Below are positions 2,916-61,775 of a stretch of DNA of 64,000 bases, piece after piece. The stretch's first letter is position 1. Every line of letters begins with the position of its first letter. The stretch spans positions 124,001 to 188,000 of the IMG/VR virus record IMGVR_UViG_3300042544_001590; one strand, written 5' to 3'. The notes below the pieces were generated by a model. That model did no database searches. It had not been told where the DNA came from and saw only the letters and a list, made by a program, of their open reading frames with translations. The position numbers were made by a program, and so were the translations under genes.

Positions 2916-3182
2916 TTAAATTACTGGTTTTTCATTAACATCAACACCCATGCTTTCGTAAATTCGTTTCACGTTTCTATGTGCGGATGAAATCTCCCCA
3001 ATGTTTGGGAATTTTGGTTTAGGTTTATCAGGAGTGCTATGGAACATTGAATAATTATTAATTGTTTTTATCATATGTTCAATCATGTGTTTGGAATCCA
3101 TTAGAAGAGACAAATGATCTTGAGAAGAATCTGTTTTCAAAGATTCCCACATGATTTCATTTTCTTCTAATTTTGATATCAT
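2916..3182 (-). CDS. hypothetical protein
   Basis: Likely start MISKLEENEIMWES at 3182 within tracked ORF 2916..3320; N-terminus resembles the neighbour's EENAVLWES. Confidence 0.55.
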   Translation of the reverse strand: MISKLEENEIMWESLKTDSSQDHLSLLMDSKHMIEHMIKTINNYSMFHSTPDKPKPKFPNIGEISSAHRNVKRIYESMGVDVNEKPVI

Positions 3183-3192
3183 ATTAAAATTG

Positions 3193-3645
3193 TTAGTAGT
3201 CGTCGGCTTGTTCAAAACCAGTGTTGGCGAAATCTGCCTTGGCATCCAGACGATGCCAAACATCGGAAACATATGTGGATGCAATCGTGATGGCGGAAAC
3301 CATCCAATCCTCAAATTCACATTCGTTTTTCATGTCATACAAACGATCTGCGTATTCAGCGAGTTTTTTCAACTCTGCCACAAGAACTTCATTAACTTCA
3401 TGCTTCTCGACATGACCAACTGGTTCAATTTCCATAACCATTCCATGTGCTTCAGGCTCATCGTCGTCACCGAAGTCATCGTCGTCACCAAAATCTGGCA
3501 TCATTCCATAATCATCATCGTCATCAAAATCATCACCCATATCATCACCAAAGTCATCATCCATCTCGTCATCGAATCTTTTGTTCATAACTCCACTACG
3601 GAAAGATTCCCAAAGCACGGCATTTTCTTCTCCTTTGAATTTCAT
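3193..3645 (-). CDS. acidic hypothetical protein, putative head-internal
   Basis: Asp-rich; C-terminal EDWMVSAITIASTYVSDVWHRLD recalls a segment common in large myovirus proteins; TAAATA-N5-ATG. Confidence 0.7.
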   Translation of the reverse strand: MKFKGEENAVLWESFRSGVMNKRFDDEMDDDFGDDMGDDFDDDDDYGMMPDFGDDDDFGDDDEPEAHGMVMEIEPVGHVEKHEVNEVLVAELKKLAEYADRLYDMKNECEFEDWMVSAITIASTYVSDVWHRLDAKADFANTGFEQADDY

Positions 3646-3653
3646 AGTAATAT

Positions 3654-4055
3654 TTAGTCCATCTGATCTAAATTATCCCGAATGTCCTGTCCTTGTTGTG
3701 CGGGACGGATGATTGGGAGGACTTTTGATTGATATAAATCCTTGGCGGTCTGTCCCGATGCTTGGATTTTCTTGATATTATCAGGTCTGCGTAGTAAATC
3801 TAAGATGTTTTCCAGAGCGATGCGATCAGTGCCGCTAGGAGGTTCCATGAGAGCCGCCAGAACCACATCCTCCATGTATCGGATTTCAGCGGGAGAACTC
3901 AGGGGGATCGTCTCCGCTGGCTCTTCTGGGGGCATCTCAGGTGCAGGAGCTTGACCTTCTTGGGGTGCCTGTTCCATACCAGCTTCAGGATTTTGTTCAT
4001 CCTGTTCCAGAATGGATTGATATCTTTCGATAAGTTGTAAGGTTTTTGATTTCAT
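3654..4055 (-). CDS. hypothetical protein
   Basis: ORF MKSKTLQLIERYQSILEQ...; packed cluster. Confidence 0.65.
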   Translation of the reverse strand: MKSKTLQLIERYQSILEQDEQNPEAGMEQAPQEGQAPAPEMPPEEPAETIPLSSPAEIRYMEDVVLAALMEPPSGTDRIALENILDLLRRPDNIKKIQASGQTAKDLYQSKVLPIIRPAQQGQDIRDNLDQMD

Positions 4056-9291: not shown

Positions 9292-10303
9292 GAAACCTAA
9301 AATAGCACTATTTTCAGACCTTCATTTGGGTCTGTATGGAAATTCGACAGAGTGGCATGAAATCGCCTTGAAATGGGCTGATTGGATTGTGTCTGATCTG
9401 AAGAAAAAGAAGATTACGGATATATTTTTCCTTGGTGATTTCTTCCACAATCGTTCGGAGATTTCAGTCCAGACAATACATGTTGCATCAGAATTGATTG
9501 CCAAGTTCAAGGATTTCAACCTCTTGATGGTGATAGGAAACCACGATGCGTTCTACAAGAACCGTTCCGATGTCCATAGCTTGGGATTCCTCAAGGGACA
9601 TGATAACATCACCATCATTGATCAGAACTTGGAATTTGATGCATTTAATAAGAAATTGCTATTTGTCCCATGGAATCACGAATTACCCGAAGGTAAATTT
9701 GACTACATCTTTGGTCATTTTGAAATTCAAACATTCCAAATGAACAATTATAAGGTATGTGATCACGGATTCCAAGTCATGGATTTTCTAGCATCCCGAA
9801 CGACTAATGTTTGGAGCGGTCACTTCCACACCAAGAGCATCAAGAAATACAATGAAGGAACGATTCGATATATTGGCAACACATTCCACCACGATTTCAA
9901 CGATTGTGGAGATGACAAGGGTTATCACATTCTGAATCTGGAAGATGATTCCGTCGAATTTGTGAAAAATACGGTGTCTCCTGAATTTATTAAGATTCCC
10001 CTGTCCAAGATCAAGGACTACAAAGCGGAGGATGTGGAAGGAAACATAATCAAGCTAATCATTGACAAAGATGTGGAAGATGATAAGGTGGAGAAGTTCA
10101 AGATTTACCTGTCCAACTTTGCTCCTTTCCGTCTTACCACGGAATACAACGTGGCAACAAAGACAATTGGGGATGTTGAACAGGTGGATTCCATTGATAT
10201 TGTTGGTATGTTTGACGAATTTTATGAACAACTCAAGCTGGACGACGAACAATTAGTAAGAGTGAAGAAAATTAACGATGAATTGTATGACAAATGTAAG
10301 TAA
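9284..10303 (+). CDS. gp47: recombination endonuclease subunit gp47 (Mre11/SbcD-like)
   Basis: Metallophosphoesterase motifs SDLHLG, GDFFH, GNHD, GHFH. Confidence 0.92.
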   Translation: MIKKPKIALFSDLHLGLYGNSTEWHEIALKWADWIVSDLKKKKITDIFFLGDFFHNRSEISVQTIHVASELIAKFKDFNLLMVIGNHDAFYKNRSDVHSLGFLKGHDNITIIDQNLEFDAFNKKLLFVPWNHELPEGKFDYIFGHFEIQTFQMNNYKVCDHGFQVMDFLASRTTNVWSGHFHTKSIKKYNEGTIRYIGNTFHHDFNDCGDDKGYHILNLEDDSVEFVKNTVSPEFIKIPLSKIKDYKAEDVEGNIIKLIIDKDVEDDKVEKFKIYLSNFAPFRLTTEYNVATKTIGDVEQVDSIDIVGMFDEFYEQLKLDDEQLVRVKKINDELYDKCK

Positions 10304-10541
10304 TCCCCTGTTAAGAGCTTTCAAACATACAATAAAAATATCGGAACGCGAAAGAGATGTTCCCATGGAGGAATATATACACAAATATATATTAATGCAT
10401 GGAAGTTGTCTCATAATGGATAGAATCTTGAAAAGAGTTGGCGATAAGGATTCATTAACATTTGATGTTACATATATTTTCAATGATAATCCAACAGATG
10501 ATAAAATTGTCGAAGCTTTGATAAAAATAAACGCATTATAA
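10287..10541 (+). CDS. small accessory protein
   Basis: Starts at the ATG inside junction copy 1. Confidence 0.55.
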   Translation: MTNVSNPLLRAFKHTIKISERERDVPMEEYIHKYILMHGSCLIMDRILKRVGDKDSLTFDVTYIFNDNPTDDKIVEALIKINAL

Positions 10542-10554
10542 TGAAACGAATTGT

Positions 10555-10791
10555 ATGAAAAGTGTAAGTGATTTTGATTTGAAAAAGGTTTTTGTCGAAG
10601 AGGTCACTGAGCGTATTGGTCAACATGTTTTGGCAAGTAAGGTCAGAGATGCTACGATAGAAGATATTGAAAAAGAATTGGAAAATCATAAAAATGGTAA
10701 ATGTGGACATTCTATTGTTGAAGACACATATGGGTGGTTGTATGATTTTAGGGGGTGTGCTATTTGTGGAAAGGGACTTGGAACTGTATGA
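10555..10791 (+). CDS. small Cys/His (Zn-binding-like) accessory protein
   Basis: CGH...CAICGKG; starts at the ATG inside junction copy 2. Confidence 0.6.
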   Translation: MKSVSDFDLKKVFVEEVTERIGQHVLASKVRDATIEDIEKELENHKNGKCGHSIVEDTYGWLYDFRGCAICGKGLGTV

Positions 10792-11708
10792 AAAAAATAA
10801 TTTATAAAAAATTAAAAGGTCAAAATTTCCTTAGCATTGGCAACGATCAGATTGTGATTGATTTTCAATCTGGTTTCAATCTGATCACTGCTAAGAATAT
10901 CGACAACCCTGATCGCCAAAACGGGGGAGGCAAGTCAACATTGGCGGAACTTTTCTATTTCGCCCAATTTGGTAAAACCATCCGTGAAATTAAAAAGGAT
11001 TTCATCATCAACAATATCACCAAAGGAAAAGGTGCTATTGAATTGACGTTTGACGTAGAGACTGATAATGACACTCAGACATACACAATCAAGCGACAAC
11101 TCAAACCAAGCTCTGTAACTCTCTTAAAAGGAGATGAAGATATCACTAAGGATTCAATTGCCAATACTGATAAATTCATCTGTGATCTGATCGGTTCCAA
11201 TCCTGTGATCTGCCGTAGTTGTGATATTCTATCTCTTTCCGATAACATCCCGTTCATGGCGAAGAAACCAGAGGAGAAGCGCAAGTTTATCAATGATATT
11301 TTCTCTTTGGAAGTCTTTGGTAAGATGAGTAATGAATTGAAGAATCTGATTCGTGATAATAAAGGGGAGATGAACATTTCCACTGCAAGATTGGAAGAAC
11401 TTAACCACACTCTGGAAACGCTGAATGATCAGCAAGCGGATTATCTGAAGAAAGTCCAAGAACGGGAAGCAATCCTCGAACAAAAGCGTAAGGAGATCCA
11501 AGAGAAGATCGACGAAACGGAGGAAAAGATTGCTAAAATATCCATAACGGATGTCTCAACAATACAATTGGAGCAAGAGAAGTATCATGAAGCTTGGAGA
11601 AAATTGGATGGGAAGATCGGTCATGTGAACGATGCGATTTCATCCAAGGAGACTTTGAGAAAGTTGAAGGTGAAAGAAATTGAACAAATTGAGAAAGTAA
11701 CAAAATGA
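10788..11708 (+). CDS. gp46: gp46 (Rad50/SbcC-like) N-terminal half
   Basis: GQNFLSIG, Walker A QNGGGKS, Q-loop region then coiled coil; ends EKVTK-stop. Confidence 0.9.
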   Translation: MKKIIYKKLKGQNFLSIGNDQIVIDFQSGFNLITAKNIDNPDRQNGGGKSTLAELFYFAQFGKTIREIKKDFIINNITKGKGAIELTFDVETDNDTQTYTIKRQLKPSSVTLLKGDEDITKDSIANTDKFICDLIGSNPVICRSCDILSLSDNIPFMAKKPEEKRKFINDIFSLEVFGKMSNELKNLIRDNKGEMNISTARLEELNHTLETLNDQQADYLKKVQEREAILEQKRKEIQEKIDETEEKIAKISITDVSTIQLEQEKYHEAWRKLDGKIGHVNDAISSKETLRKLKVKEIEQIEKVTK

Positions 11709-12031
11709 ACACGGAATGTGAAAATTTATCTGGAAGTATAGATATTGGAGAATACCAGAAAATGTTGGCAAGTGTCCCCAAAGCAGCTAAAGAATGTGGG
11801 ATGATTCAACATGAGGATGGATTGTATAAAATGTGGGTTGATTGTAAAGTGATTGATAAATTCACCAAAAACAAATTGTTTGGGGGTAGAAAATATTATT
11901 TTGTTCTCAATATCATGGGAATAACCAAAGAAATTCAAGTGGATGAAAATAATTACTACAATCAATCAGAGATGAATAGAATACATATGTATTCTGAAGA
12001 CCGTAAAACATGGTTCCCAACCAGACAATAA
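11705..12031 (+). CDS. inserted ORF splitting gp46; paralogue of 18603..18935
   Basis: 61 of 72 C-terminal residues identical to the 18603 protein; many DNA differences are synonymous. Confidence 0.8.
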   Translation: MNTECENLSGSIDIGEYQKMLASVPKAAKECGMIQHEDGLYKMWVDCKVIDKFTKNKLFGGRKYYFVLNIMGITKEIQVDENNYYNQSEMNRIHMYSEDRKTWFPTRQ

Positions 12032-12033
12032 AA

Positions 12034-12906
12034 ATGATTAAATGCGACAAATGCCTCCAAGATATTCCCCATACTCATGTGGAACATCTGGAGAAGATGA
12101 AAGAACAATATCAATCGGAATTGGATGATATTGTCAAGGAAATTGATGAATTGAAAGAACAAAAATCTCAATTCCATTCGAAAAAAGAAAAGGTTCAAGC
12201 TAAGGTAGCTGAGTTTCAGGATCAAATCAATGAATCGAAAGTCACCAAACAAAAATTGGAAGGTCTGGAAAACAGTCTCAAGCAATACAAAGATTCTTTG
12301 AACAACTTGAAGCTGGAAGAATTACCTAAACCAAATTTTGAGGAAAGTATTCAAAATACTTGGGTGAGACAAAATACTGAGAATGATAATTTCCGAATGC
12401 TTAAACAGAAATCAGATGATTATGAAATCTGTAAGTTCGTTCTTGGTGAAGAAGGTGTTCGTAGCTTTGTGGTGAAGAGACTTCTTTCCATGATGAACGC
12501 AAGCATTCAGCAATACATCAACGATCTTGGTATGTCCATCCGTTGTAAATTTGACGAATACTTTGATGAGCAGCTTTCCAATGACAAAGGTAAGGAGATT
12601 TCCTACTGGAACTTGAGCGGTGGTGAACGTAGAACAGTTGACCTCGCGTGTGCGTGGGCGTTCAAGGACTTGAAAAGGAAGATTTCGGGAGTGTCATCCA
12701 ATGTGGAATTTTTTGATGAATACCTCGATTCCACCCTAGATTCCACAGGAATTGATAAGTTGATCGAACAAATCAAACAACGAATTGATAGATTTGATCT
12801 TTCTGTTTATGTGATTTCCCATAGAACAGAAACCGCCAAACATGTTACAGGATCAGTAATTGAACTCGCTAAAGAAGGTGGAGTTACTAGGAGAATTTAT
12901 AATTGA
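12034..12906 (+). CDS. gp46: gp46 (Rad50/SbcC-like) C-terminal half
   Basis: Begins MIK-CDKC (zinc hook), coiled coil, LSGGE signature, FFDE Walker B, VISH H-loop. Confidence 0.9.
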   Translation: MIKCDKCLQDIPHTHVEHLEKMKEQYQSELDDIVKEIDELKEQKSQFHSKKEKVQAKVAEFQDQINESKVTKQKLEGLENSLKQYKDSLNNLKLEELPKPNFEESIQNTWVRQNTENDNFRMLKQKSDDYEICKFVLGEEGVRSFVVKRLLSMMNASIQQYINDLGMSIRCKFDEYFDEQLSNDKGKEISYWNLSGGERRTVDLACAWAFKDLKRKISGVSSNVEFFDEYLDSTLDSTGIDKLIEQIKQRIDRFDLSVYVISHRTETAKHVTGSVIELAKEGGVTRRIYN

Positions 12907-25711: not shown

Positions 25712-25920
25712 GTGAAAAATTTGAAGAACCGGAATGGTCGAAGGAAGCATCGAAAGAATTTTCTAAAGAATATTGTGAAAAAGTTGACAAGTCATTTGTA
25801 GAAGCCATTAATCATTATTACAATATTCTCGGAGAAACTGATAAAATTGACATCAAAAGGTGTTTACAACAGTGTATAGATAATACCACCAAGAGTTACG
25901 GATTTAAAGTGAATGAGTGA
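25708..25920 (+). CDS. small accessory protein
   Basis: ATGA overlap start MSEKFEE; overlaps helicase start. Confidence 0.55.
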   Translation: MSEKFEEPEWSKEASKEFSKEYCEKVDKSFVEAINHYYNILGETDKIDIKRCLQQCIDNTTKSYGFKVNE

Positions 25921-27229
25921 AATTGATTTTGATTATTTTGAGAAAGTTCTGGTGAAGAACGCGATCACAAATGGGTCTTATCTCGCTTCCATCGCTGATT
26001 ACGTCCAACCAAAATATTTTACTGATAAAAATATCGCAAAATATTTTGAGATTGTCGCGGATTTCTATGAGAAACGGCAAGCTCTTCCCACATTTTCAGA
26101 GGTTAAAACGTATCTCACCACTGATGAACTCAAGACCAACTTCAAAAAGCTGATTGAGTCTTTCAAGGAGATTGATTCCAACCACAATGAGGATGAATTA
26201 TACGAGAATACGGAAAGATTTCTCAAGGAACGGGGGATGTATCACTCCATTTTGGAGTCAGCGGAAGAAATATCGGAAGGAGAAGCTGATACTGCCAAGA
26301 TCGTGGAGAAATTTGAGAAGATTGCGGGTATTAATCTCAATGTTGACAAGGGAATTGAGCTTTATGGTGATGTTGAGAAGGTTATTGATGACATTCTGAG
26401 TGATGAAGCTACCATTTCTTCCAAATGGCCATGGTTGGATGAGGCTCTTGGTGGAGGATTTCAAGAAGCTGGTAAGGCTCTGTATGTGTTTGCTGGACAA
26501 TCCAACATTGGTAAGAGTATCTTCCTTGGTAACGTTGCTGCAAACATGGCATCCCAAGGTAAGCATGTGCTTGTGGTGACTTTGGAGATGAGTGAAACGC
26601 TCTATGCCAAGAGAATTGCGTCCAATGTGACGAAGATTCCCATGAAGGAGTTCCGAAATTGTGTTCCCACGCTTAGACATGCTCTGGAAGAGGAACATAA
26701 GAACACTGATGGTAGAATTTACATCAAGGAATTTCCCCCATCAACGATTACTCCCAAGCAATTGGGAGCGTTCATCAAGAAGATGAAGGATTCTGGTATT
26801 AGGATTGATGCTATTGTTCTTGACTACATCACCTTGATGACTGCTGCTGGTGTAAATTCCTATGAGAAAGGCAAGAACATCTGTGAACAGATCAGAGCGT
26901 TGACGTATGTATTTAAATGCCCTATAATTAGCGCATGTCAGCTAAATCGATCTGCTGTGGGGCAAAATAACCCTGATATGTCGGGTGTTGCAGAGAGTTT
27001 GGCAATTGTCATGACTGCTGACGTTATCACATCCATCTTCCAGAACGAGGAAGATCAGGAAATGGGTATTATCCGTCTGGGAATGATGAAAAACCGATTT
27101 GGTATGCGGGGAATGGTTCAAGCCATGAGGATTGACTACCAAACGCTCACCGTTTATCAATCGGAGGAAGATGAGGAAGAGTTGATGAACGATGAAGAAC
27201 TTAGTCTGCTTGAGAAGCTTTCGGAATAA
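25913..27229 (+). CDS. gp41: replicative DnaB-like helicase (gp41)
   Basis: AGQSNIGKS Walker A, VTLEMSE, IVLDY, SACQLNR, MKNRFG. Confidence 0.92.
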   Translation: MSEIDFDYFEKVLVKNAITNGSYLASIADYVQPKYFTDKNIAKYFEIVADFYEKRQALPTFSEVKTYLTTDELKTNFKKLIESFKEIDSNHNEDELYENTERFLKERGMYHSILESAEEISEGEADTAKIVEKFEKIAGINLNVDKGIELYGDVEKVIDDILSDEATISSKWPWLDEALGGGFQEAGKALYVFAGQSNIGKSIFLGNVAANMASQGKHVLVVTLEMSETLYAKRIASNVTKIPMKEFRNCVPTLRHALEEEHKNTDGRIYIKEFPPSTITPKQLGAFIKKMKDSGIRIDAIVLDYITLMTAAGVNSYEKGKNICEQIRALTYVFKCPIISACQLNRSAVGQNNPDMSGVAESLAIVMTADVITSIFQNEEDQEMGIIRLGMMKNRFGMRGMVQAMRIDYQTLTVYQSEEDEEELMNDEELSLLEKLSE

Positions 27230-27799: not shown

Positions 27800-28699
27800 A
27801 TGGAATCACCCCTTGACAAATTCATAGAGAATACTAATTATAGTATGTCTCGCGTATTTGCTTGGGTCAACTCAGATTTAGATGGAATTGGATCAACAAT
27901 TCTATTGGGAAACCTTTTCAAAAATTTTGAGTATCGCCACTGTTTCTTCGGTAAATTTGAGGAGCAATACCTACCATGGGCGAAGGAAAACGCGGATGAT
28001 TATGATAAAATCTTCATCGTTGGCATGGTCTTGGATCAAAATCTAATCAAAAAGATTGATGATCACCGTGTCGTGTTCGTTTCAGACCGTCCCGATGACT
28101 TCAAAACATGGGATTCCACCAAGATTCAGGAAGAATGTTCATCTTGCACCAAGATGTTATATAAAAAATTCAAGGAAAAGGTGGAATTTACTAAAGATTT
28201 GAAGAAATTTTTCCTTTACGTTGACGATTATAATTCATATGATCTGAAACATGAGGAAACCAAGTATCTTAATGCTCTTTACCGCAAATCAGGGGGAAAT
28301 CGCTTTATTAATTTTGTAAATCGCTTCTGGAACGGGTTTGATGGGTTCACCACTACCGAAGTTAAGCTTGCTGAAGATTTTTTTGAGAGATTAGACGATG
28401 AATTGGTTGATATTACATTATATTCAGGAGAGTGGGAAGGATATAAGGTCATCTCCACGATTTCCAAGTTCTCCGTGAATGAATTATCCCATGCCATCAT
28501 GGAAAATTACCAAGGAGACGCTGTGATTGTAATGAATGCGGATACTCAATTTGTATCTTTTAGGAAATACAAAGGATCAGAGGTTGACATTGCGAAAATG
28601 GCTGGTAATCTGTGTGACGGTGGTGGCGGCGAATGGGCTGCTGGTGGAAAAATCACCAAGGAATTTTTGAAATTTAGTGAAACATTGAGAGAAATATAA
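27800..28699 (+). CDS. DHH/DHHA1-like phosphoesterase-fold protein (degenerate motifs)
   Basis: SDLDGIGS motif I, DDYNSYD, C-terminal GGGGEWAAGG (cf. GGGHxxAAG). Confidence 0.65.
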   Translation: MESPLDKFIENTNYSMSRVFAWVNSDLDGIGSTILLGNLFKNFEYRHCFFGKFEEQYLPWAKENADDYDKIFIVGMVLDQNLIKKIDDHRVVFVSDRPDDFKTWDSTKIQEECSSCTKMLYKKFKEKVEFTKDLKKFFLYVDDYNSYDLKHEETKYLNALYRKSGGNRFINFVNRFWNGFDGFTTTEVKLAEDFFERLDDELVDITLYSGEWEGYKVISTISKFSVNELSHAIMENYQGDAVIVMNADTQFVSFRKYKGSEVDIAKMAGNLCDGGGGEWAAGGKITKEFLKFSETLREI

Positions 28700-29088
28700 A
28701 TTATGGAACAGATACAATACCCAATTAAAGTTTATGGTTATACTATAAAAGGATTTAATATTGATGGATTTAATATATTTGAAAGAATTTTTGATCATCC
28801 ATCAGATGGAATCGTAGATGAAATAGATGATGGTAAATTTATTAGAAAAACACCAGAGGATGTTGTAAAATTTAAATCTGATAATATGTTTAATTATAAA
28901 AGTTATTGGGTGAATTTTGACGAATTTAAATTATTTATGTGTGAACAAATTAAAGATTTTAAATTGAAGGCTGATGTAGAGTATAAAAATAAAATTGAAA
29001 ATATGAATGAATGTATGGTGGAATTGGAAAAAATAACACCAAGGAATTTTTGAAATTTAGCGAAACACTGAACGAAATTTAAATTATG
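28654..29088 (+). repeat. 52-bp imperfect direct repeat (28654-28705, 29037-29088) flanking ORF 28703..29053
   Basis: 47/52 identical; both copies encode TKEFLKFSETL(R/N)EI-stop-ATT-ATG. Confidence 0.85.
28703..29053 (+). CDS. AT-rich accessory protein between direct repeats
   Basis: 116 aa ORF, AAA/TTT-rich codons. Confidence 0.6.
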   Translation: MEQIQYPIKVYGYTIKGFNIDGFNIFERIFDHPSDGIVDEIDDGKFIRKTPEDVVKFKSDNMFNYKSYWVNFDEFKLFMCEQIKDFKLKADVEYKNKIENMNECMVELEKITPRNF

Positions 29089-29373
29089 AGTAATCCTTCT
29101 CCATCTTCTGCAATTATAGAAAGCGAAAGCGATCACCTATTCCTTTGCTATTGTTCCTTCGTGAACCATCTCAAGGGCAAGAAATTGTCCATCCAGAACG
29201 TTTTCGTGACCACTCTCCAAGAGGAGAAGCTGAAAACGATCCTGAAAACGATATTGTCTCTTGACTCTGATCAGGAACTTGTTAAGGTTTTCCTAGACCA
29301 AGACAACGCTCTTGCAAAGTCGAAATACGTTACGAAATTTATCAGGGGGGAACAGAAGAAGAAAAAGAAATGA
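29086..29373 (+). CDS. hypothetical protein
   Basis: 95 aa, core-like codon usage. Confidence 0.65.
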   Translation: MSNPSPSSAIIESESDHLFLCYCSFVNHLKGKKLSIQNVFVTTLQEEKLKTILKTILSLDSDQELVKVFLDQDNALAKSKYVTKFIRGEQKKKKK

Positions 29374-29669
29374 AATACACATACTCAATCCAATGCCCAT
29401 GTCTAAACGATTGGAACTCTTTCATCAAAGACGAAATCAAATCTTATTGCGATGGCTACATGGATGCCATGAAAGGAGAGATGCCACGGATTCACCTGAG
29501 AATGGTTCGTTCAGATGGTAAGATCATCAGAGAAATAACAGAACACGATGATGTGGGTATTGGCATGATCGCTGGATTTCCCACTGCCGAACAATATGAA
29601 CGGGCTGCGGAGAGGGCATTGGAGAGAGCAAGGAAAATTAGGGAAAATCAAGAGAAGAACAGACGATGA
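29370..29669 (+). CDS. hypothetical protein
   Basis: 99 aa coupled ORF. Confidence 0.6.
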   Translation: MKYTYSIQCPCLNDWNSFIKDEIKSYCDGYMDAMKGEMPRIHLRMVRSDGKIIREITEHDDVGIGMIAGFPTAEQYERAAERALERARKIRENQEKNRR

Positions 29670-29986
29670 TTACTAATTTAGGCGATACTGGTTCACAACA
29701 TTCCCATCGCAATTATTATTGTCCAACATGTAAATGTTTTGGTTGGAGAACACCACACGAAGAAGGCTGCGTTGGGGAGAAGGTTATGATTTCAGCCACC
29801 GCTAGAATACCGAGAAAAAATGCTTCTAAAAAGACATGGGATGAATTTTATGATAAGTTCGTCCTCCAGAAAGATTTGAAAGAATTTTTATCAAAACCTA
29901 AAAAAGAATCCAAATCAATGAAGACTTGGAGAATACGGAGAAAGTTGAAATCATTCGACGTTAAAACCAATAAATGGTATGACTGA
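29666..29986 (+). CDS. hypothetical protein with CxxCxC motif
   Basis: CPTCKC...H..C. Confidence 0.6.
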   Translation: MITNLGDTGSQHSHRNYYCPTCKCFGWRTPHEEGCVGEKVMISATARIPRKNASKKTWDEFYDKFVLQKDLKEFLSKPKKESKSMKTWRIRRKLKSFDVKTNKWYD

Positions 29987-30605
29987 TTTTCAAAAAAGAA
30001 TATATAACTCCCATCTCGCCATCTCCCGCAAGATGCGTGACAAACCATTTCGGATTAGAAAAGATTTCTCCGATATGGATCAAACCAAGCTGGATTACCT
30101 TGCTTCTCTGGAAAGGTTCTTCAATAGTTATAATAATATTAAAATTGATGATTACTTCTCTGCTCCTTATAGGATTTTTGAGGACACTGATTATTTTGAT
30201 TTGGAATTCTACTTGACTTCCAAGGCGAAGAAGGCATACTCCCAATATATGAAGAAGATTGAGATGGACGATCCCGATTCCGAAAGCTCTCTCAAGCGAT
30301 TGGCAGATAGTCTCAAATTTGTCAAAAATTTCTGCAAAGAAAAGGGCTTGACTTTGGAAGAATATCCACTATATATAGAGGTATCGCTGCCGAACATGAT
30401 TGAGCATCTAAAGAACCATCACATTAATATGTATTGTTTGCATTCTTTGGGTGTCTCAAAAATCGAGGTGGATAATCGGATTTTGGATTTCATATTCTCG
30501 GATTTTTGGATTACATTCCAGAAGACGAAGAATAAATACTTTCTCAGTAAGAAAATGAAGGATTTTGGGAAAAAAGCAATAACAAAAATACGAACACAAT
30601 TATGA
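29979..30605 (+). CDS. hypothetical protein (possibly gp59-like helicase loader)
   Basis: 208 aa basic helical protein just upstream of gp32; function from synteny only. Confidence 0.5.
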   Translation: MTDFQKRIYNSHLAISRKMRDKPFRIRKDFSDMDQTKLDYLASLERFFNSYNNIKIDDYFSAPYRIFEDTDYFDLEFYLTSKAKKAYSQYMKKIEMDDPDSESSLKRLADSLKFVKNFCKEKGLTLEEYPLYIEVSLPNMIEHLKNHHINMYCLHSLGVSKIEVDNRILDFIFSDFWITFQKTKNKYFLSKKMKDFGKKAITKIRTQL

Positions 30606-30844
30606 ACATGCGAGCTAAATTCAGAGTAACAGAAGTTAAAACACCATACGAAGGTCAGGAAGAATTACATTGGGTTCCCGTGACGGAATCTCCATTTAAT
30701 GAGCATGGTATTAGTGAAGATAATACTTATTCAAAATGGACACCCAGCGGTGAACTTAGAATGGTAATCACTAATCCAGCACTACTTGGAAAATATGAAG
30801 TCGGGGATAAATATTATCTCGACTTCATAAAAGCAGAACAATAA
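30602..30844 (+). CDS. small conserved phage protein
   Basis: RAKFRV...SKWTPSGELRMVITNP...YYLDF pattern. Confidence 0.65.
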   Translation: MNMRAKFRVTEVKTPYEGQEELHWVPVTESPFNEHGISEDNTYSKWTPSGELRMVITNPALLGKYEVGDKYYLDFIKAEQ

Positions 30845-30877: not shown

Positions 30878-31792
30878 ATGAGCAATACAAAAACAAAAAG
30901 CAAATTCGGCGCAGCTATGTTCGATTCGATCAAAGCAGCATTAAACAAGAGCAACGATTCATCGGGAGGTCAATTCTCCAATATCATGAGTTTCCCCGCA
31001 GGACACACCTACACGCTTAGGTTGATCCCCAACGTGGAAAACTTTGAGAAGAGCGTCTTTGCTCATTGGGTGCATGGATTTACCAGCAAGGCGAGTGGTA
31101 AATACATGAGCTTTCTTGGTCTTCAAACCATGGGAGATCGTGATCCGATTTCAGATCTTCGTTGGAAGCTTTTCAAAAGCTGGAAAGAAGCAAATCCCAA
31201 GGCTGAAAACAAAGAATACAAGGCGGAAATCTCTCAAAAGGAGCAATGGCTTGTGAATGTCTATGTGATCAACGATCCCGCAAAGCCTGAGAACAATGGC
31301 ACGGTGAAGATTCTTCGCATGGGTCCACAACTCAAGAAGATCATTGACGATGCTACCGAAGGGGAGCGTTCCGATGAACTTGGATGGGATATCTTTGATC
31401 CTACCAAGGGACATGATTTCAAGATCGTGGCAGAGAAGAAAGGTGATTACACCACGTTTGAATCTTCGTTCATCACCACCAAATCCAAGACTGTTCTGGA
31501 TGAGGAAGAGATTGAAAAGATTTGTTCGGAAATCCATGATCTGGAAGCTGTGTATTCCGTGAAGACTTATGATGAGCTTCAGGAAGTTCTCAATGAACAC
31601 TTCTTCGTTGGCGAGGAAAAGGAAGAGCGTAAGCCTCTTAAACAAGCCAAGCAGGAAGCAGCTAAAGTTGAGGACGACGATGACGACATTCCCATGGTTC
31701 ACGAAGAAAAGAAATCAGCGGCAAAACCCAAGAAAGTGGAAAAGCAAGAGGACGATGAAATTGACGAACTCCTTGCAGGACTAGATGACTAA
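30878..31792 (+). CDS. gp32: single-stranded DNA-binding protein (gp32-like)
   Basis: LRLIP, NVYVINDPAKPENNGTVKI, FDPTKGHDFKI; acidic C-terminal tail. Confidence 0.88.
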   Translation: MSNTKTKSKFGAAMFDSIKAALNKSNDSSGGQFSNIMSFPAGHTYTLRLIPNVENFEKSVFAHWVHGFTSKASGKYMSFLGLQTMGDRDPISDLRWKLFKSWKEANPKAENKEYKAEISQKEQWLVNVYVINDPAKPENNGTVKILRMGPQLKKIIDDATEGERSDELGWDIFDPTKGHDFKIVAEKKGDYTTFESSFITTKSKTVLDEEEIEKICSEIHDLEAVYSVKTYDELQEVLNEHFFVGEEKEERKPLKQAKQEAAKVEDDDDDIPMVHEEKKSAAKPKKVEKQEDDEIDELLAGLDD

Positions 31793-42951: not shown

Positions 42952-43437
42952 TCAGAACCCAAGCTTTTTACAATAACTTTCACATTCAATAGGCACAACT
43001 GTTCCAGTTCTTGGAACAGTTGTTGTGGTCGTTGTGGTCGTAGTCGTTGTTGTGGTGGTCGTAGTTATTTGAATGGTGAATGGATTGAGAGATGTCGGGG
43101 GTATTAGATCAATAACTAACGGGGGAATGGTTCGTGTTGTAAAGTTCGGAATGACGGGGGAATTGATTACTGGTGGGTTTGGAGGGGGCGCACAGCAATC
43201 ACTTAAAGATGGTGTCGTGGAAGAACCTGATGGTGTTGTTCCAGTGGTGCTTGTGGGGGGTTCTGGCGTGGTGGTGCCTGAGAGAGTAGTGGTGGTGCTT
43301 GTGGGGGGTTCTGTAGTGATGGGGGGTTCTGGCGTGGTGCTGGTAGTACTCGTGGTGCCTGAGAGAGTAGTGCTGGTGCTTGTGGTGGGTTCTGGCGTGG
43401 TGGTGCCTGAGAGAGTAGTGGTGGTGCTTGTGGGCAT
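42952..43437 (-). CDS. mucin-like Thr/Pro/Ser-rich protein
   Basis: Repeats of TSTTTTLSGTTTPEP, long poly-Thr run, Cys-containing segments. Confidence 0.7.
   Translation of the reverse strand: MPTSTTTTLSGTTTPEPTTSTSTTLSGTTSTTSTTPEPPITTEPPTSTTTTLSGTTTPEPPTSTTGTTPSGSSTTPSLSDCCAPPPNPPVINSPVIPNFTTRTIPPLVIDLIPPTSLNPFTIQITTTTTTTTTTTTTTTTVPRTGTVVPIECESYCKKLGF
43258..43433 (-). repeat. coding tandem repeats in the mucin-like gene
   Basis: Three near copies of ggttctggcgtggtg...gtgcctgagagagtagt...gtgcttgtgg. Confidence 0.8.
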
Positions 43438-61058: not shown

Positions 61059-61775
61059 ATGGCACAATATAATAACAAAGATCAGCGCAATCTGGAAGAA
61101 CTCCTTGAAGAAGGGTGGATGGATCGTCTCAAGGCACGGGGAGCCGAAGCTTTGGGTTCCGTCAAAGGAGTGGGGCAACAAATCAAAGGTGGCTTTCAAC
61201 AAGCTGCTGGCAGTGGCTTGAGTAAGGCTGGAGATTGGCTTGAAAGCGATAAGATTTCTCGTAAAGGGGATAAATACACGCAACAAGGTCAAAAAAGTGA
61301 GCGAGAAGGAAGCGTCTCTGGTCACAATGCCAAAGTCCAGTATCTTCAGAAGAATATTGACAAACGTATTGACTCATTTGTTGCCGATATCAAAAATGAT
61401 ATTAAAAAGCTTGGTCTGGACATTGGTAACATTGAAATCGTGTCTGGTATCAATGCTGCTCTTGGACAACTCAAGAAAAGCGTGAGCGGTGCAACACCTC
61501 CTCCTTTACCACAACAATCTGGCGCAACACCTCCTCCTTTACCCCAACAATCTGGCGCAACACCCCCACCACTTCCAAAACAACAAACACCGGAGCCAGA
61601 AGAGGATGAGCCGGAAAATCCCGTGGAATACTCTTACAGAAAAGCTATTAGTAGGAAGAAAAAAACACAACCAAACACTAATCCCCGTAAAAGTAAGGTG
61701 AGAAAAGACCCATTTGCAAAATATGCCGCTCCCGAACAGGAAGAGGATTTGGACAAGATGTTTTGGGAACGCTAA
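61059..61775 (+). CDS. hypothetical late protein with Pro-rich repeats
   Basis: Start MAQYNNKD by TAAATA-N5 rule; GATPPPLP(Q/K)Q x3. Confidence 0.7.
   Translation: MAQYNNKDQRNLEELLEEGWMDRLKARGAEALGSVKGVGQQIKGGFQQAAGSGLSKAGDWLESDKISRKGDKYTQQGQKSEREGSVSGHNAKVQYLQKNIDKRIDSFVADIKNDIKKLGLDIGNIEIVSGINAALGQLKKSVSGATPPPLPQQSGATPPPLPQQSGATPPPLPKQQTPEPEEDEPENPVEYSYRKAISRKKKTQPNTNPRKSKVRKDPFAKYAAPEQEEDLDKMFWER
61488..61586 (+). repeat. 33-bp coding tandem repeat x3
   Basis: gg(t/c)gcaacacc...ccacaacaatct units. Confidence 0.8.

What the first reader, a model, noticed from the sequence alone, without database searches (positions are those of the whole stretch)
28654..29088. Accessory gene bracketed by a 52-bp duplication of the upstream gene's 3' end
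Seen: 28654-28705 and 29037-29088 match at 47/52. The first copy encodes the real C-terminus TKEFLKFSETLREI-stop. The second is an out-of-frame relic TKEFLKFSETLNEI-stop, with AGT/AGC and TTG/CTG synonymous differences, followed by the next gene's ATG. Inference: the incoming cassette carried its own allele of the gene end, as in att-type integration into a 3' end or recombination with a relative. The cassette could be excised by recombination between the repeats. No integrase is visible in the window. Together with the gp47/gp46 case this points to a recurring junction-duplicating insertion process.
Basis: partly seen in the sequence, partly recalled or inferred. Interest (0 to 1): 0.6.

Follow-up and report, generated by a model that had tools for sequence, protein, structure and literature searches.

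The report
Recombination scar flanking phage accessory gene
A small accessory gene in a lake-water T4-like phage sits between two copies of the last 52 bases of the neighbouring gene; comparison with about 50 related phage contigs shows this is an ordinary scar of misaligned recombination between related phages at a gene-swapping hotspot, not a site-specific insertion.

Summary
Window 28654-28705 and 29037-29088 match at 47/52 (self-BLAST E about 1e-12), and independent lake metagenome assemblies show the same structure. Copy 1 is the true 3' end of a DHH-family phosphoesterase-like gene. Copy 2 is a non-coding relic placed just before the next gene's ATG.

The window belongs to a complete 207-kb virus record with terminal repeats and T4-like replication and recombination genes. 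It encodes no integrase. Many relatives have the DHH gene directly abutting the next gene, four of them with the identical TAAATTATG junction. Others carry at least six unrelated inserts at the same slot.

One relative (L046) keeps a longer, apparently native C-terminus of the accessory gene. In the window, homology to it stops and DHH-end homology starts at a shared 5-nt CACCA. Two diverged lineages share this breakpoint. One of their relics is identical over 43 nt to a real DHH end of an empty-site relative.

Best explanation: a microhomology-mediated, out-of-register crossover between related phages truncated the accessory gene and joined it to a relative's DHH end. Homologous exchange through the relic followed. 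The gp47/gp46 junction shows the same kind of scar. This is a clear example of a known process, of modest interest.

The parts
27800..28699 (+). Anchor gene: 299-aa DHH-family phosphoesterase-like protein, conserved in all relatives
   Evidence: ORF. Both family hits are weak: Pfam DHH E 9e-4, below the gathering score, and PHROG 26954 'DHH phosphoesterase' E 8e-6 over residues 27-290. 43 related loci at 81-100% aa identity.
28654..28705 (+). Repeat copy 1: the true last 14 codons of the DHH gene, stop TAA, ATT spacer, and the ATG used by the accessory gene
   Evidence: The same TAAATTATG junction precedes next95 in the empty-site relatives L018, L024, L039 and L040.
28703..29053 (+). Accessory ORFan (116 aa), C-terminally truncated; its last 5 codons and stop are read from the relic in another frame
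   Evidence: No Pfam or PHROG family. Relatives P0002 and P0003 are 83% identical. dN/dS is 0.21-0.24. L046 has a tail about 17 residues longer, apparently native.
28706..29036 (+). Cassette-specific DNA (331 nt), absent from empty-site relatives
29037..29041 (+). Breakpoint microhomology CACCA: last bases shared with the full-length accessory gene of L046 and first bases shared with the DHH 3' end
   Evidence: Junction sequences compared. All DHH-end duplicates start at this base.
29037..29088 (+). Repeat copy 2: non-coding relic of a DHH 3' end (TKEFLKFSETLNEI-stop) plus TAAATT and the ATG of the next gene
   Evidence: The nearest real allele is that of L024/L039 (4/43 differences, with the identical following 15 nt).
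29086..29373 (+). Downstream anchor gene next95 (95 aa, unknown function), conserved in relatives

Best explanation
The space between the DHH-family gene and the next conserved gene (next95) is a hypervariable slot in a recombining population of lake T4-like phages. Different lineages carry nothing there, or one to several unrelated small genes. The bracketing repeat is the scar of one misaligned (out-of-register) crossover between two related genomes. One parent carried DHH followed by the full-length accessory gene. The other carried DHH followed directly by its own downstream neighbour. The join formed at a 5-nt microhomology (CACCA) between the accessory gene's 3' region and the partner's DHH 3' end. 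This removed about the last 20 codons of the accessory gene, which now ends after 5 codons read out of frame from the relic. It left 52 nt of the partner's DHH end, with its native stop-spacer-ATG, in front of next95. The relic is homologous to every relative's DHH end. It has therefore since recombined or been converted with real DHH ends, so the truncated gene plus relic now sits in front of different right-hand contexts in different lineages. Shown: the repeat, the empty sites, the alternative inserts, the shared breakpoint, the longer tail in L046, the absence of an integrase, and purifying selection on the accessory gene. Inferred: the direction and order of events, a single origin, refreshment of the relic by homologous exchange, and that the relic itself has no function.
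For: Empty sites: about 20 loci have DHH abutting next95, four of them (L018, L024, L039, L040) with exactly ...TLREI TAAATT ATGAGTAAT. Same slot, other contents: inserts of 488, 537-572, 688, 870, 2255 and 2624 nt carrying unrelated genes. Truncation: L046 reads ...EEITP then 19 further residues and overlaps the next gene by ATGA, whereas the window, P0002 and P0003 read ITP(R/K)N(F/L)-stop. That tail has no other match among the loci. Breakpoint: every DHH-end duplicate (window, L047/48, L049/50) begins at the same base, the C of CACCA. Age and function: dS among the three truncated alleles is 0.34-0.43 and dN/dS 0.21-0.24. Relics look like real alleles: the window relic differs from copy 1 at 5/43, within the 3-8/43 range among real ends, and the L049 relic equals the real end of L042 at 43/43, including its ATGA-type junction. 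The three right-hand contexts behind the relic each match what follows DHH in some relative: next95 with TAAATTATG (window), a TGAG junction at the contig end (L049), and a truncated L014-type gene start (L047). The recombination machinery is present and the population is mosaic: UvsX, gp46/gp47 and gp32; best neighbours change tile by tile; and ORF 29666-29986 is 100% identical to L047 amid flanks of about 88%. No integrase or resolvase in the complete genome. No promoter or terminator signal above shuffled controls. The same kind of scar occurs at gp47/gp46: a 25-nt gp47-end relic joined to the first 11 nt of a gp46 start.
Against: The full-length parent arrangement rests on one lineage (L046 and L052-L054). 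All its contigs begin inside the accessory gene, so its left junction with DHH was never seen. The exact relic allele of the window was not found as a real DHH end in IMG/VR. A single origin followed by exchange cannot be strictly separated from repeated formation at the same microhomology. A 5-nt microhomology is short and could be coincidental. The 21-nt relic in L047 is a weak match (E 0.28 in a small database).
Confidence: 0.75

Rival explanations
1. Site-specific (att-type) integration: a mobile cassette carrying its own copy of the DHH 3' end integrated into that end, as integrative elements do at tRNA or gene 3' ends.
For: The insertion leaves the DHH reading frame intact and is flanked by direct repeats.
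Against: The complete 207-kb genome has no tyrosine or serine recombinase. The element is 331 nt with one ORF that was truncated at the joint. The repeats differ at 5/52. No terminal inverted repeats were found. Other inserts at the same slot lack such repeats.
Confidence: 0.03
2. Recurrent independent formation: the CACCA site is a hotspot (for example for template switching) and the same joint arose separately in the window, L047 and L049 lineages.
For: Each relic resembles local or contemporary real alleles rather than the other relics. Window and L049 relics differ at 6/43 by direct comparison of the sequences. L049 equals the real L042 allele. In the window allele a weak hairpin ends at the breakpoint.
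Against: Three lineages with exactly the same breakpoint are more simply explained by one event. The hairpin is absent from the DHH alleles of the relatives. Full-length donors would be needed in each lineage, and only one was seen.
Confidence: 0.1
3. The relic is kept by selection, either as the native translation-initiation context of next95 or as a homology arm, rather than being a neutral scar.
For: The relic retains the exact stop-spacer-ATG context of empty-site relatives. It has stayed allele-like although dS among the truncated accessory-gene alleles that share the breakpoint is about 0.4. In the gp47 slot the relic carries the start codon of the inserted ORF.
Against: In relatives with other inserts, next95 is preceded by unrelated sequence, so the DHH end is not required for its expression. 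In L047 the relic is cut to 21 nt.
Confidence: 0.1
4. Assembly artefact or chimeric contig.
For: This is metagenome-derived sequence. Repeats can mislead assemblers.
Against: Independent runs X3 and X4 give contigs that bridge each copy into unique flanks without differences. Diverged lineages L047-L050 from other samples carry the same architecture.
Confidence: 0.01

Closest known systems
PeSL-mediated modular shuffling in T4-type phages (Arbiol et al. 2010, PMC2839356; Comeau et al. 2014, PMC4122927)
   Same: An ORFan in a T4-like genome is flanked by direct repeats of tens of bases. Relatives carry a single copy at the empty site. Recombination between the repeats would delete the ORFan and could release a mini-circle of about 400 bp, the size class of the ORF210 mini-circle described there.
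   Different: PeSLs are intergenic regulatory cassettes (an early promoter plus a stem-loop) repeated many times in a genome. Here the repeat is the coding 3' end of the upstream gene, it occurs only twice, and it has no promoter or terminator signal. No mini-circles were tested. PeSL-like upstream cassettes do exist elsewhere in this genome, but not at this slot.
Illegitimate or homeologous recombination model of phage mosaicism (Hendrix/Hatfull model, from my own knowledge; lambda Red homeologous recombination, Martinsohn et al. 2008, PMC2327257: title and abstract seen, paper not read)
   Same: Joints at very short homologies between related genomes, survival of joints that keep genes functional, relics of genes at module boundaries, and later spread by homologous recombination in flanking conserved genes.
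   Different: This is an instance, not a departure. What is unusual is only that the parent-like arrangements (empty site, full-length gene) and several descendants of the same joint can all be seen in one population.
Integrative elements that duplicate the 3' end of their target gene (att sites in tRNA or protein genes)
   Same: The target gene stays intact because the element supplies or duplicates its 3' end. Direct repeats flank the insert.
   Different: There is no integrase, no self-contained element and no identical core, and the insert's own gene is damaged at the joint.
Morons of lambdoid phages
   Same: A single extra gene of unknown function sits between two conserved genes.
   Different: Morons carry their own promoter and terminator. 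None is detectable here, and the gene is start/stop-coupled into the surrounding gene array.

Membership tests
Microhomology-mediated (illegitimate) recombination joint between related phages | The joint lies on a few bases shared by the two otherwise unrelated parental sequences | tested here: met
   CACCA is shared by the full-length accessory gene (L046) and the DHH 3' end. Homology switches there.
Microhomology-mediated (illegitimate) recombination joint between related phages | A truncated gene and/or a gene relic is present at the joint | tested here: met
   The accessory gene lacks about 20 codons present in L046. A 52-nt DHH-end relic is present.
Microhomology-mediated (illegitimate) recombination joint between related phages | Both parental arrangements exist in the population | tested here: inconclusive
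   The empty-site parent type is clearly present. The full-length-gene parent type was seen only from mid-gene onwards, so its DHH junction is unseen.
PeSL regulatory cassettes (T4-type modular shuffling) | The flanking repeats are intergenic promoter plus stem-loop cassettes | tested here: not met
   The repeat is coding sequence of the DHH gene. Promoter and terminator scans are at the shuffled expectation.
PeSL regulatory cassettes (T4-type modular shuffling) | Relatives show a single repeat copy where the ORFan is absent | tested here: met
   Empty-site loci L018, L024, L039 and L040, and about 16 others.
PeSL regulatory cassettes (T4-type modular shuffling) | Excision products or mini-circles are formed | not testable with these tools
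   Only Logan contigs were available. They showed no joints, but contigs cannot reveal rare forms.
att-type site-specific integration | A tyrosine or serine recombinase is encoded by the element or the genome | tested here: not met
   PF00589 and PF00239 are absent from the complete 207-kb genome, while the control genomes were positive.
att-type site-specific integration | An identical core sequence is present at both ends of a self-contained element | tested here: not met
   The copies differ at 5/52. The insert is one truncated ORF.
Transposon or IS insertion with target-site duplication | A short identical duplication, terminal inverted repeats and a transposase | tested here: not met
   No inverted repeats at the insert ends. 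The insert ORF has no family hit.
Homing-endonuclease-driven insertion | The insert encodes an HNH, GIY-YIG or LAGLIDADG nuclease | tested here: not met
   No Pfam or PHROG hit for the 116-aa ORF.
Moron | Own promoter and terminator flank the gene | tested here: not met

The most novel reading that the evidence does not exclude
The truncated accessory gene plus relic behaves as a homology-armed cassette. The DHH gene lies on its left and a 52-nt DHH-end copy on its right. It could therefore be copied by ordinary phage homologous recombination into the end of the DHH gene of any relative, whatever lies downstream, and be lost again precisely. The relic is continually re-templated from real DHH ends. 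Coding gene ends would then play the role that PeSL regulatory cassettes play elsewhere. Stacking of cassettes with anchor-gene relics (also seen at gp47/gp46) would be a general way in which T4-like phages build accessory gene arrays.
Probability: 0.3. Interest if true: 0.5.

Novelty: new member of a known kind. Interest (0 to 1): 0.3.

Why it matters
The finding gives an unusually complete natural record of how accessory genes are gained, stacked and trimmed in large lytic phages. The empty site, the alternative occupants, the apparently intact version of the gene, the exact microhomology joint and several diverged descendants of that joint are all visible in one lake population. It supports the view that misaligned recombination between co-infecting relatives, followed by homologous exchange, is enough to build hypervariable slots without dedicated integrases. 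It does not reveal a new mechanism. For annotation, it warns that the C-terminus of the 116-aa ORF is a fusion artefact, and that short 'extra' gene ends in such genomes are scars, not genes.

Tried and rejected
- BLASTN of 27800-29700 against the GenBank phage collection found no match.
- A protein-pattern scan of JGI metagenome contigs for the accessory gene found nothing. A profile scan of IMG/VR added no loci beyond L045 and L046.
- I tried to obtain the DHH junction of the full-length lineage through its neighbouring 177-aa gene. All three contigs start at the same place inside the accessory gene.
- The window's exact relic allele, searched as a real DHH end in IMG/VR, matched only the window's own lineage.
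- Function of the 116-aa protein stayed open. There is no Pfam or PHROG family. The AlphaFold2 model has mean pLDDT 54.6, too poor for fold search. The ESM Atlas gave no usable hit. The exhaustive representative-protein search was not run, so 'ORFan' means only that no relatives were found beyond this phage clade in the searches made.
- Own promoter or terminator (moron, PeSL): not above shuffled expectation.
- A hairpin at the breakpoint (28642-28658) as a functional element: rejected, because it is specific to the window's DHH allele and absent from relatives.
- A -1 frameshift on the A-run before the relic, fusing the accessory protein to the DHH tail: rejected. The run is not in a slippery register and is not conserved in L049.
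- Excision: no joint skipping 28706-29088 appeared in four runs. These were contigs only, so this is not evidence of absence.

Full report
**What is there.**
The window is bases 124001-188000 of a complete 207,489-bp IMG/VR virus record with direct terminal repeats. Sequencing runs that hold it are lake and freshwater metagenomes. Around the finding lies a tightly packed plus-strand array:
- DnaB-like helicase, 25913-27229
- a 165-aa ORF
- a 299-aa DHH-family phosphoesterase-like gene, 27800-28699 (both family hits are weak)
- a 116-aa ORF, 28703-29053
- a 95-aa ORF ('next95'), 29086-29373
- several small ORFs
- a gp32-like ssDNA-binding protein, 30878-31792

Upstream lie gp47/SbcD-like, gp46/SbcC-like, family-B DNA polymerase and UvsX-like genes. 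This is a T4-like replication and recombination module.

**The observation.**
Bases 28654-28705 and 29037-29088 match at 47/52. The repeat finder reports 58 nt at 88% with spacing 383. Self-BLAST of the genome gives E = 9.8e-13. It is the only long dispersed direct repeat in the window.

Copy 1 is the real end of the DHH gene, followed by TAA, ATT and an ATG that starts the 116-aa ORF. Copy 2 encodes the same 14 residues with one replacement (R to N) and three synonymous changes. It is out of frame with the 116-aa ORF, which terminates inside it. It ends with the same TAAATT and the ATG of next95.

Independent runs confirm the structure. An X3 contig of 14,976 nt spans 28312-29700 without a difference. 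X4 contigs bridge each copy separately.

**Relatives.**
The DHH protein retrieved 43 related IMG/VR loci at 81-100% identity. Mapping the neighbouring proteins onto them and printing the junctions shows three things.
- About twenty loci have DHH directly abutting next95. Four of them (L018, L024, L039, L040) show exactly the junction expected if the 383-bp unit were removed: ...TLREI, TAAATT, ATGAGTAAT.
- Other loci carry different inserts at the same point, of 488, 537-572, 688, 870, 2255 and 2624 nt. These encode unrelated small proteins.
- The 116-aa gene itself is rare. Besides the identical contig L001, it was found in L046 and, through two 83%-identical proteins, in L047/L048 and L049/L050.

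**The joint.**
L046 carries a version of the accessory gene that continues after ...EEITP for 19 more residues. It ends in an ATGA overlap with a 177-aa gene, followed by next95. That 177-aa gene is the same one that forms the 537-572-nt insert in L004, L010 and L028. The tail has no other match among the loci, so it looks native.

In the window, similarity to L046 runs to ...ATAACACCA (29041). Similarity to the DHH end starts at CACCA (29037). The two parental sequences therefore overlap by five bases.

A BLAST of the DHH end against all loci finds second copies only next to this accessory gene. All of them start at that same base.
- L049 has a full relic. It is 1 difference in 43 from its own DHH end, but it is followed by a TGAG junction instead of TAAATTATG.
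- L047 has only about 21 nt of relic. This is fused to the first 23 codons of the gene that follows DHH in L014, then the first 15 codons of the gene that follows DHH in L005, then the 195-aa homologue of the 177-aa gene, then next95.

The slot is thus a patchwork of whole and truncated cassettes.

**Age, selection and behaviour of the relic.**
The three truncated alleles differ at dS 0.34-0.43 with dN/dS 0.21-0.24. The ORF is therefore a functional gene, and the shared joint, if single, is old.

Yet the relics are not decayed. The window's relic differs from copy 1 at 5/43 coding positions, and real DHH ends of relatives differ from copy 1 at 3-8/43. The window relic's nearest real allele is that of the empty-site loci L024/L039 (4/43), with an identical following 15 nt. 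The L049 relic is 43/43 identical to the real DHH end of the empty-site locus L042, including its ATGA-type junction.

I infer that relics are re-templated from real DHH ends by homologous exchange or conversion. The alternative is that some joints are recent and independent.

The population is strongly mosaic. The best-matching relative changes from tile to tile. ORF 29666-29986 is 100% identical to L047 while its flanks are about 88% identical.

**Mechanism.**
One misaligned crossover explains the structure. One parent carried DHH followed by the full-length accessory gene. The other parent had DHH next to its own downstream neighbour. They joined at CACCA.

The product keeps an intact DHH gene. 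The accessory gene loses about 20 codons and gains five out-of-frame codons and a stop. The partner's last 52 nt of DHH come with the native start context of the downstream gene.

A purely intragenomic event would not place next95 directly after the relic, so a partner with an empty site, or later exchange, is required. T4-like recombination proteins are encoded in the window.

Site-specific integration is not supported. There is no tyrosine or serine recombinase in the complete genome. There are no terminal inverted repeats. No nuclease or other family hit lies in the insert. There is no promoter or terminator signal above shuffled controls.

The relic is not needed for next95 expression in general, because relatives with other inserts have unrelated sequence in front of next95.

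**Is the process recurrent?**
Yes, in the sense of repeated misaligned recombination, not of a dedicated insertion machine.

At gp47/gp46 (window 10278-10805), many relatives have gp47 overlapping gp46 directly (L059, L064, L068, L082, L088). L063 has one small ORF there and L057 has another, whose start codon lies inside the gp47 3' end. The window stacks both. Between them lies a 25-nt gp47-end relic (10548-10572), joined at a GAAT microhomology to the first 11 nt of a gp46 start.

Relatives show further relics:
- A next95 N-terminal fragment cut by a reverse-strand TnpB-like ORF (my reading of its C-terminal motifs, no family scan run), in L029.
- A DHH N-terminal fragment fused to a DnaB C-terminal relic, in L030. 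This junction is also seen as a loose end in run X6 at 28062.

**Comparison with known systems.**
The nearest described system is PeSL-mediated modular shuffling in T4-type phages. There, ORFans flanked by repeated promoter and stem-loop cassettes are deleted, form mini-circles and may reinsert (PMC2839356; PMC4122927).

The present case works like that in outline: a repeat-flanked ORFan and a single copy at empty sites. It fails the defining feature, because the repeat is a coding gene end and not a regulatory cassette. PeSL-like upstream cassettes do occur elsewhere in this genome.

The origin of the repeat fits the general illegitimate or homeologous recombination model of phage mosaicism. 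That model is from my own knowledge; for PMC2327257 I saw only the title and abstract.

**Verdict.**
It is partly wrong: no att-type integration, and the gene end belongs to the partner genome rather than to an incoming cassette.

This is a new, well-documented member of a known kind, with interest about 0.3. The most novel reading still open is that the relic makes the gene a homology-armed, portable and precisely excisable cassette. I put that at about 0.3 probability.

**Limits.**
Only contigs, not raw reads, could be laid, so excision or circles could not be tested. The left junction of the full-length lineage is unseen. The accessory protein's function is unknown. The exhaustive protein search was not run.

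Noticed in passing
window 10278-10805: The gp47/gp46 junction is a second variable slot. The window stacks two small ORFs (10278/10287-10541 and 10555-10791) that occur singly in relatives (L063, L057). Between them is a 25-nt relic of the gp47 3' end (10548-10572), joined to the first 11 nt of a gp46 start. Many relatives have gp47 directly overlapping gp46.
   Followed up: yes
window 10791-12906: The gp46/SbcC-like gene is in two ORFs (about 10791-11708 and 12010-12906), separated by a 108-aa ORF (11705-12031). In several relatives (e.g. L068, L078, L088) the two parts are contiguous. Others have a gap of about 300 nt.
   Followed up: partly
G000:C1 about 47,000-67,200 (outside the window); related motif at window 33084, 38162, 39609, 40751: More than 20 copies of a roughly 35-nt element lie directly upstream of the ATGs of small ORFs. 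It has two variants beginning ATAAAAACTAG... and ATAAAAACTAAACCATAAT..., and looks like a PeSL-like promoter/leader cassette family in a hyperplastic region. A TTAAAAACTAG core also recurs in the window.
   Followed up: partly
L029:6026-7195 (also L016, L032, L038, L043): A 41-aa N-terminal copy of next95 is interrupted by a reverse-strand 359-aa ORF. Its C-terminal zinc-ribbon and RuvC-like motifs look like TnpB/IS605 OrfB; this is my reading and no family scan was run. A second, complete next95 follows about 1.3 kb further on.
   Followed up: no
L030:2973-3293 (also L013); run X6 loose end at window 28062: A fragment of the DHH gene (residues 1-86) is fused to a relic of the DnaB helicase C-terminus. 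It lies upstream of about 700 nt of inserted DNA and the complete DHH gene. The same junction appears as a contig loose end in run X6.
   Followed up: partly
window 29666-29986: The 106-aa ORF is 100% identical in nucleotide sequence to L047, while the neighbouring genes are about 88% identical. This indicates a very recent exchange of a single gene between lineages.
   Followed up: partly
L052, L053, L054 (same lineage as L046): Three separate assemblies of the full-length accessory-gene lineage all break at the same place inside that gene. This suggests population heterogeneity or a repeat just upstream.
   Followed up: no
L046:2109-3032: A 307-aa GIY-YIG/NUMOD3 homing-endonuclease-like gene sits between the 208-aa ORF homologue and gp32 in L046. 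In the window an 80-aa ORF (30602-30844) lies between those two genes instead.
   Followed up: no
window 3139-3191 and 3602-3654 (minus-strand genes): Two adjacent minus-strand genes share a similar upstream region and first roughly 14 codons (53 nt, 75%). This may be tandem paralogues or another junction duplication.
   Followed up: no
window 43245-43434 and 61488-61586: Tandem repeat arrays with periods of about 48/33 nt and 33 nt lie inside ORFs. The second encodes a proline-rich repeat.
   Followed up: no
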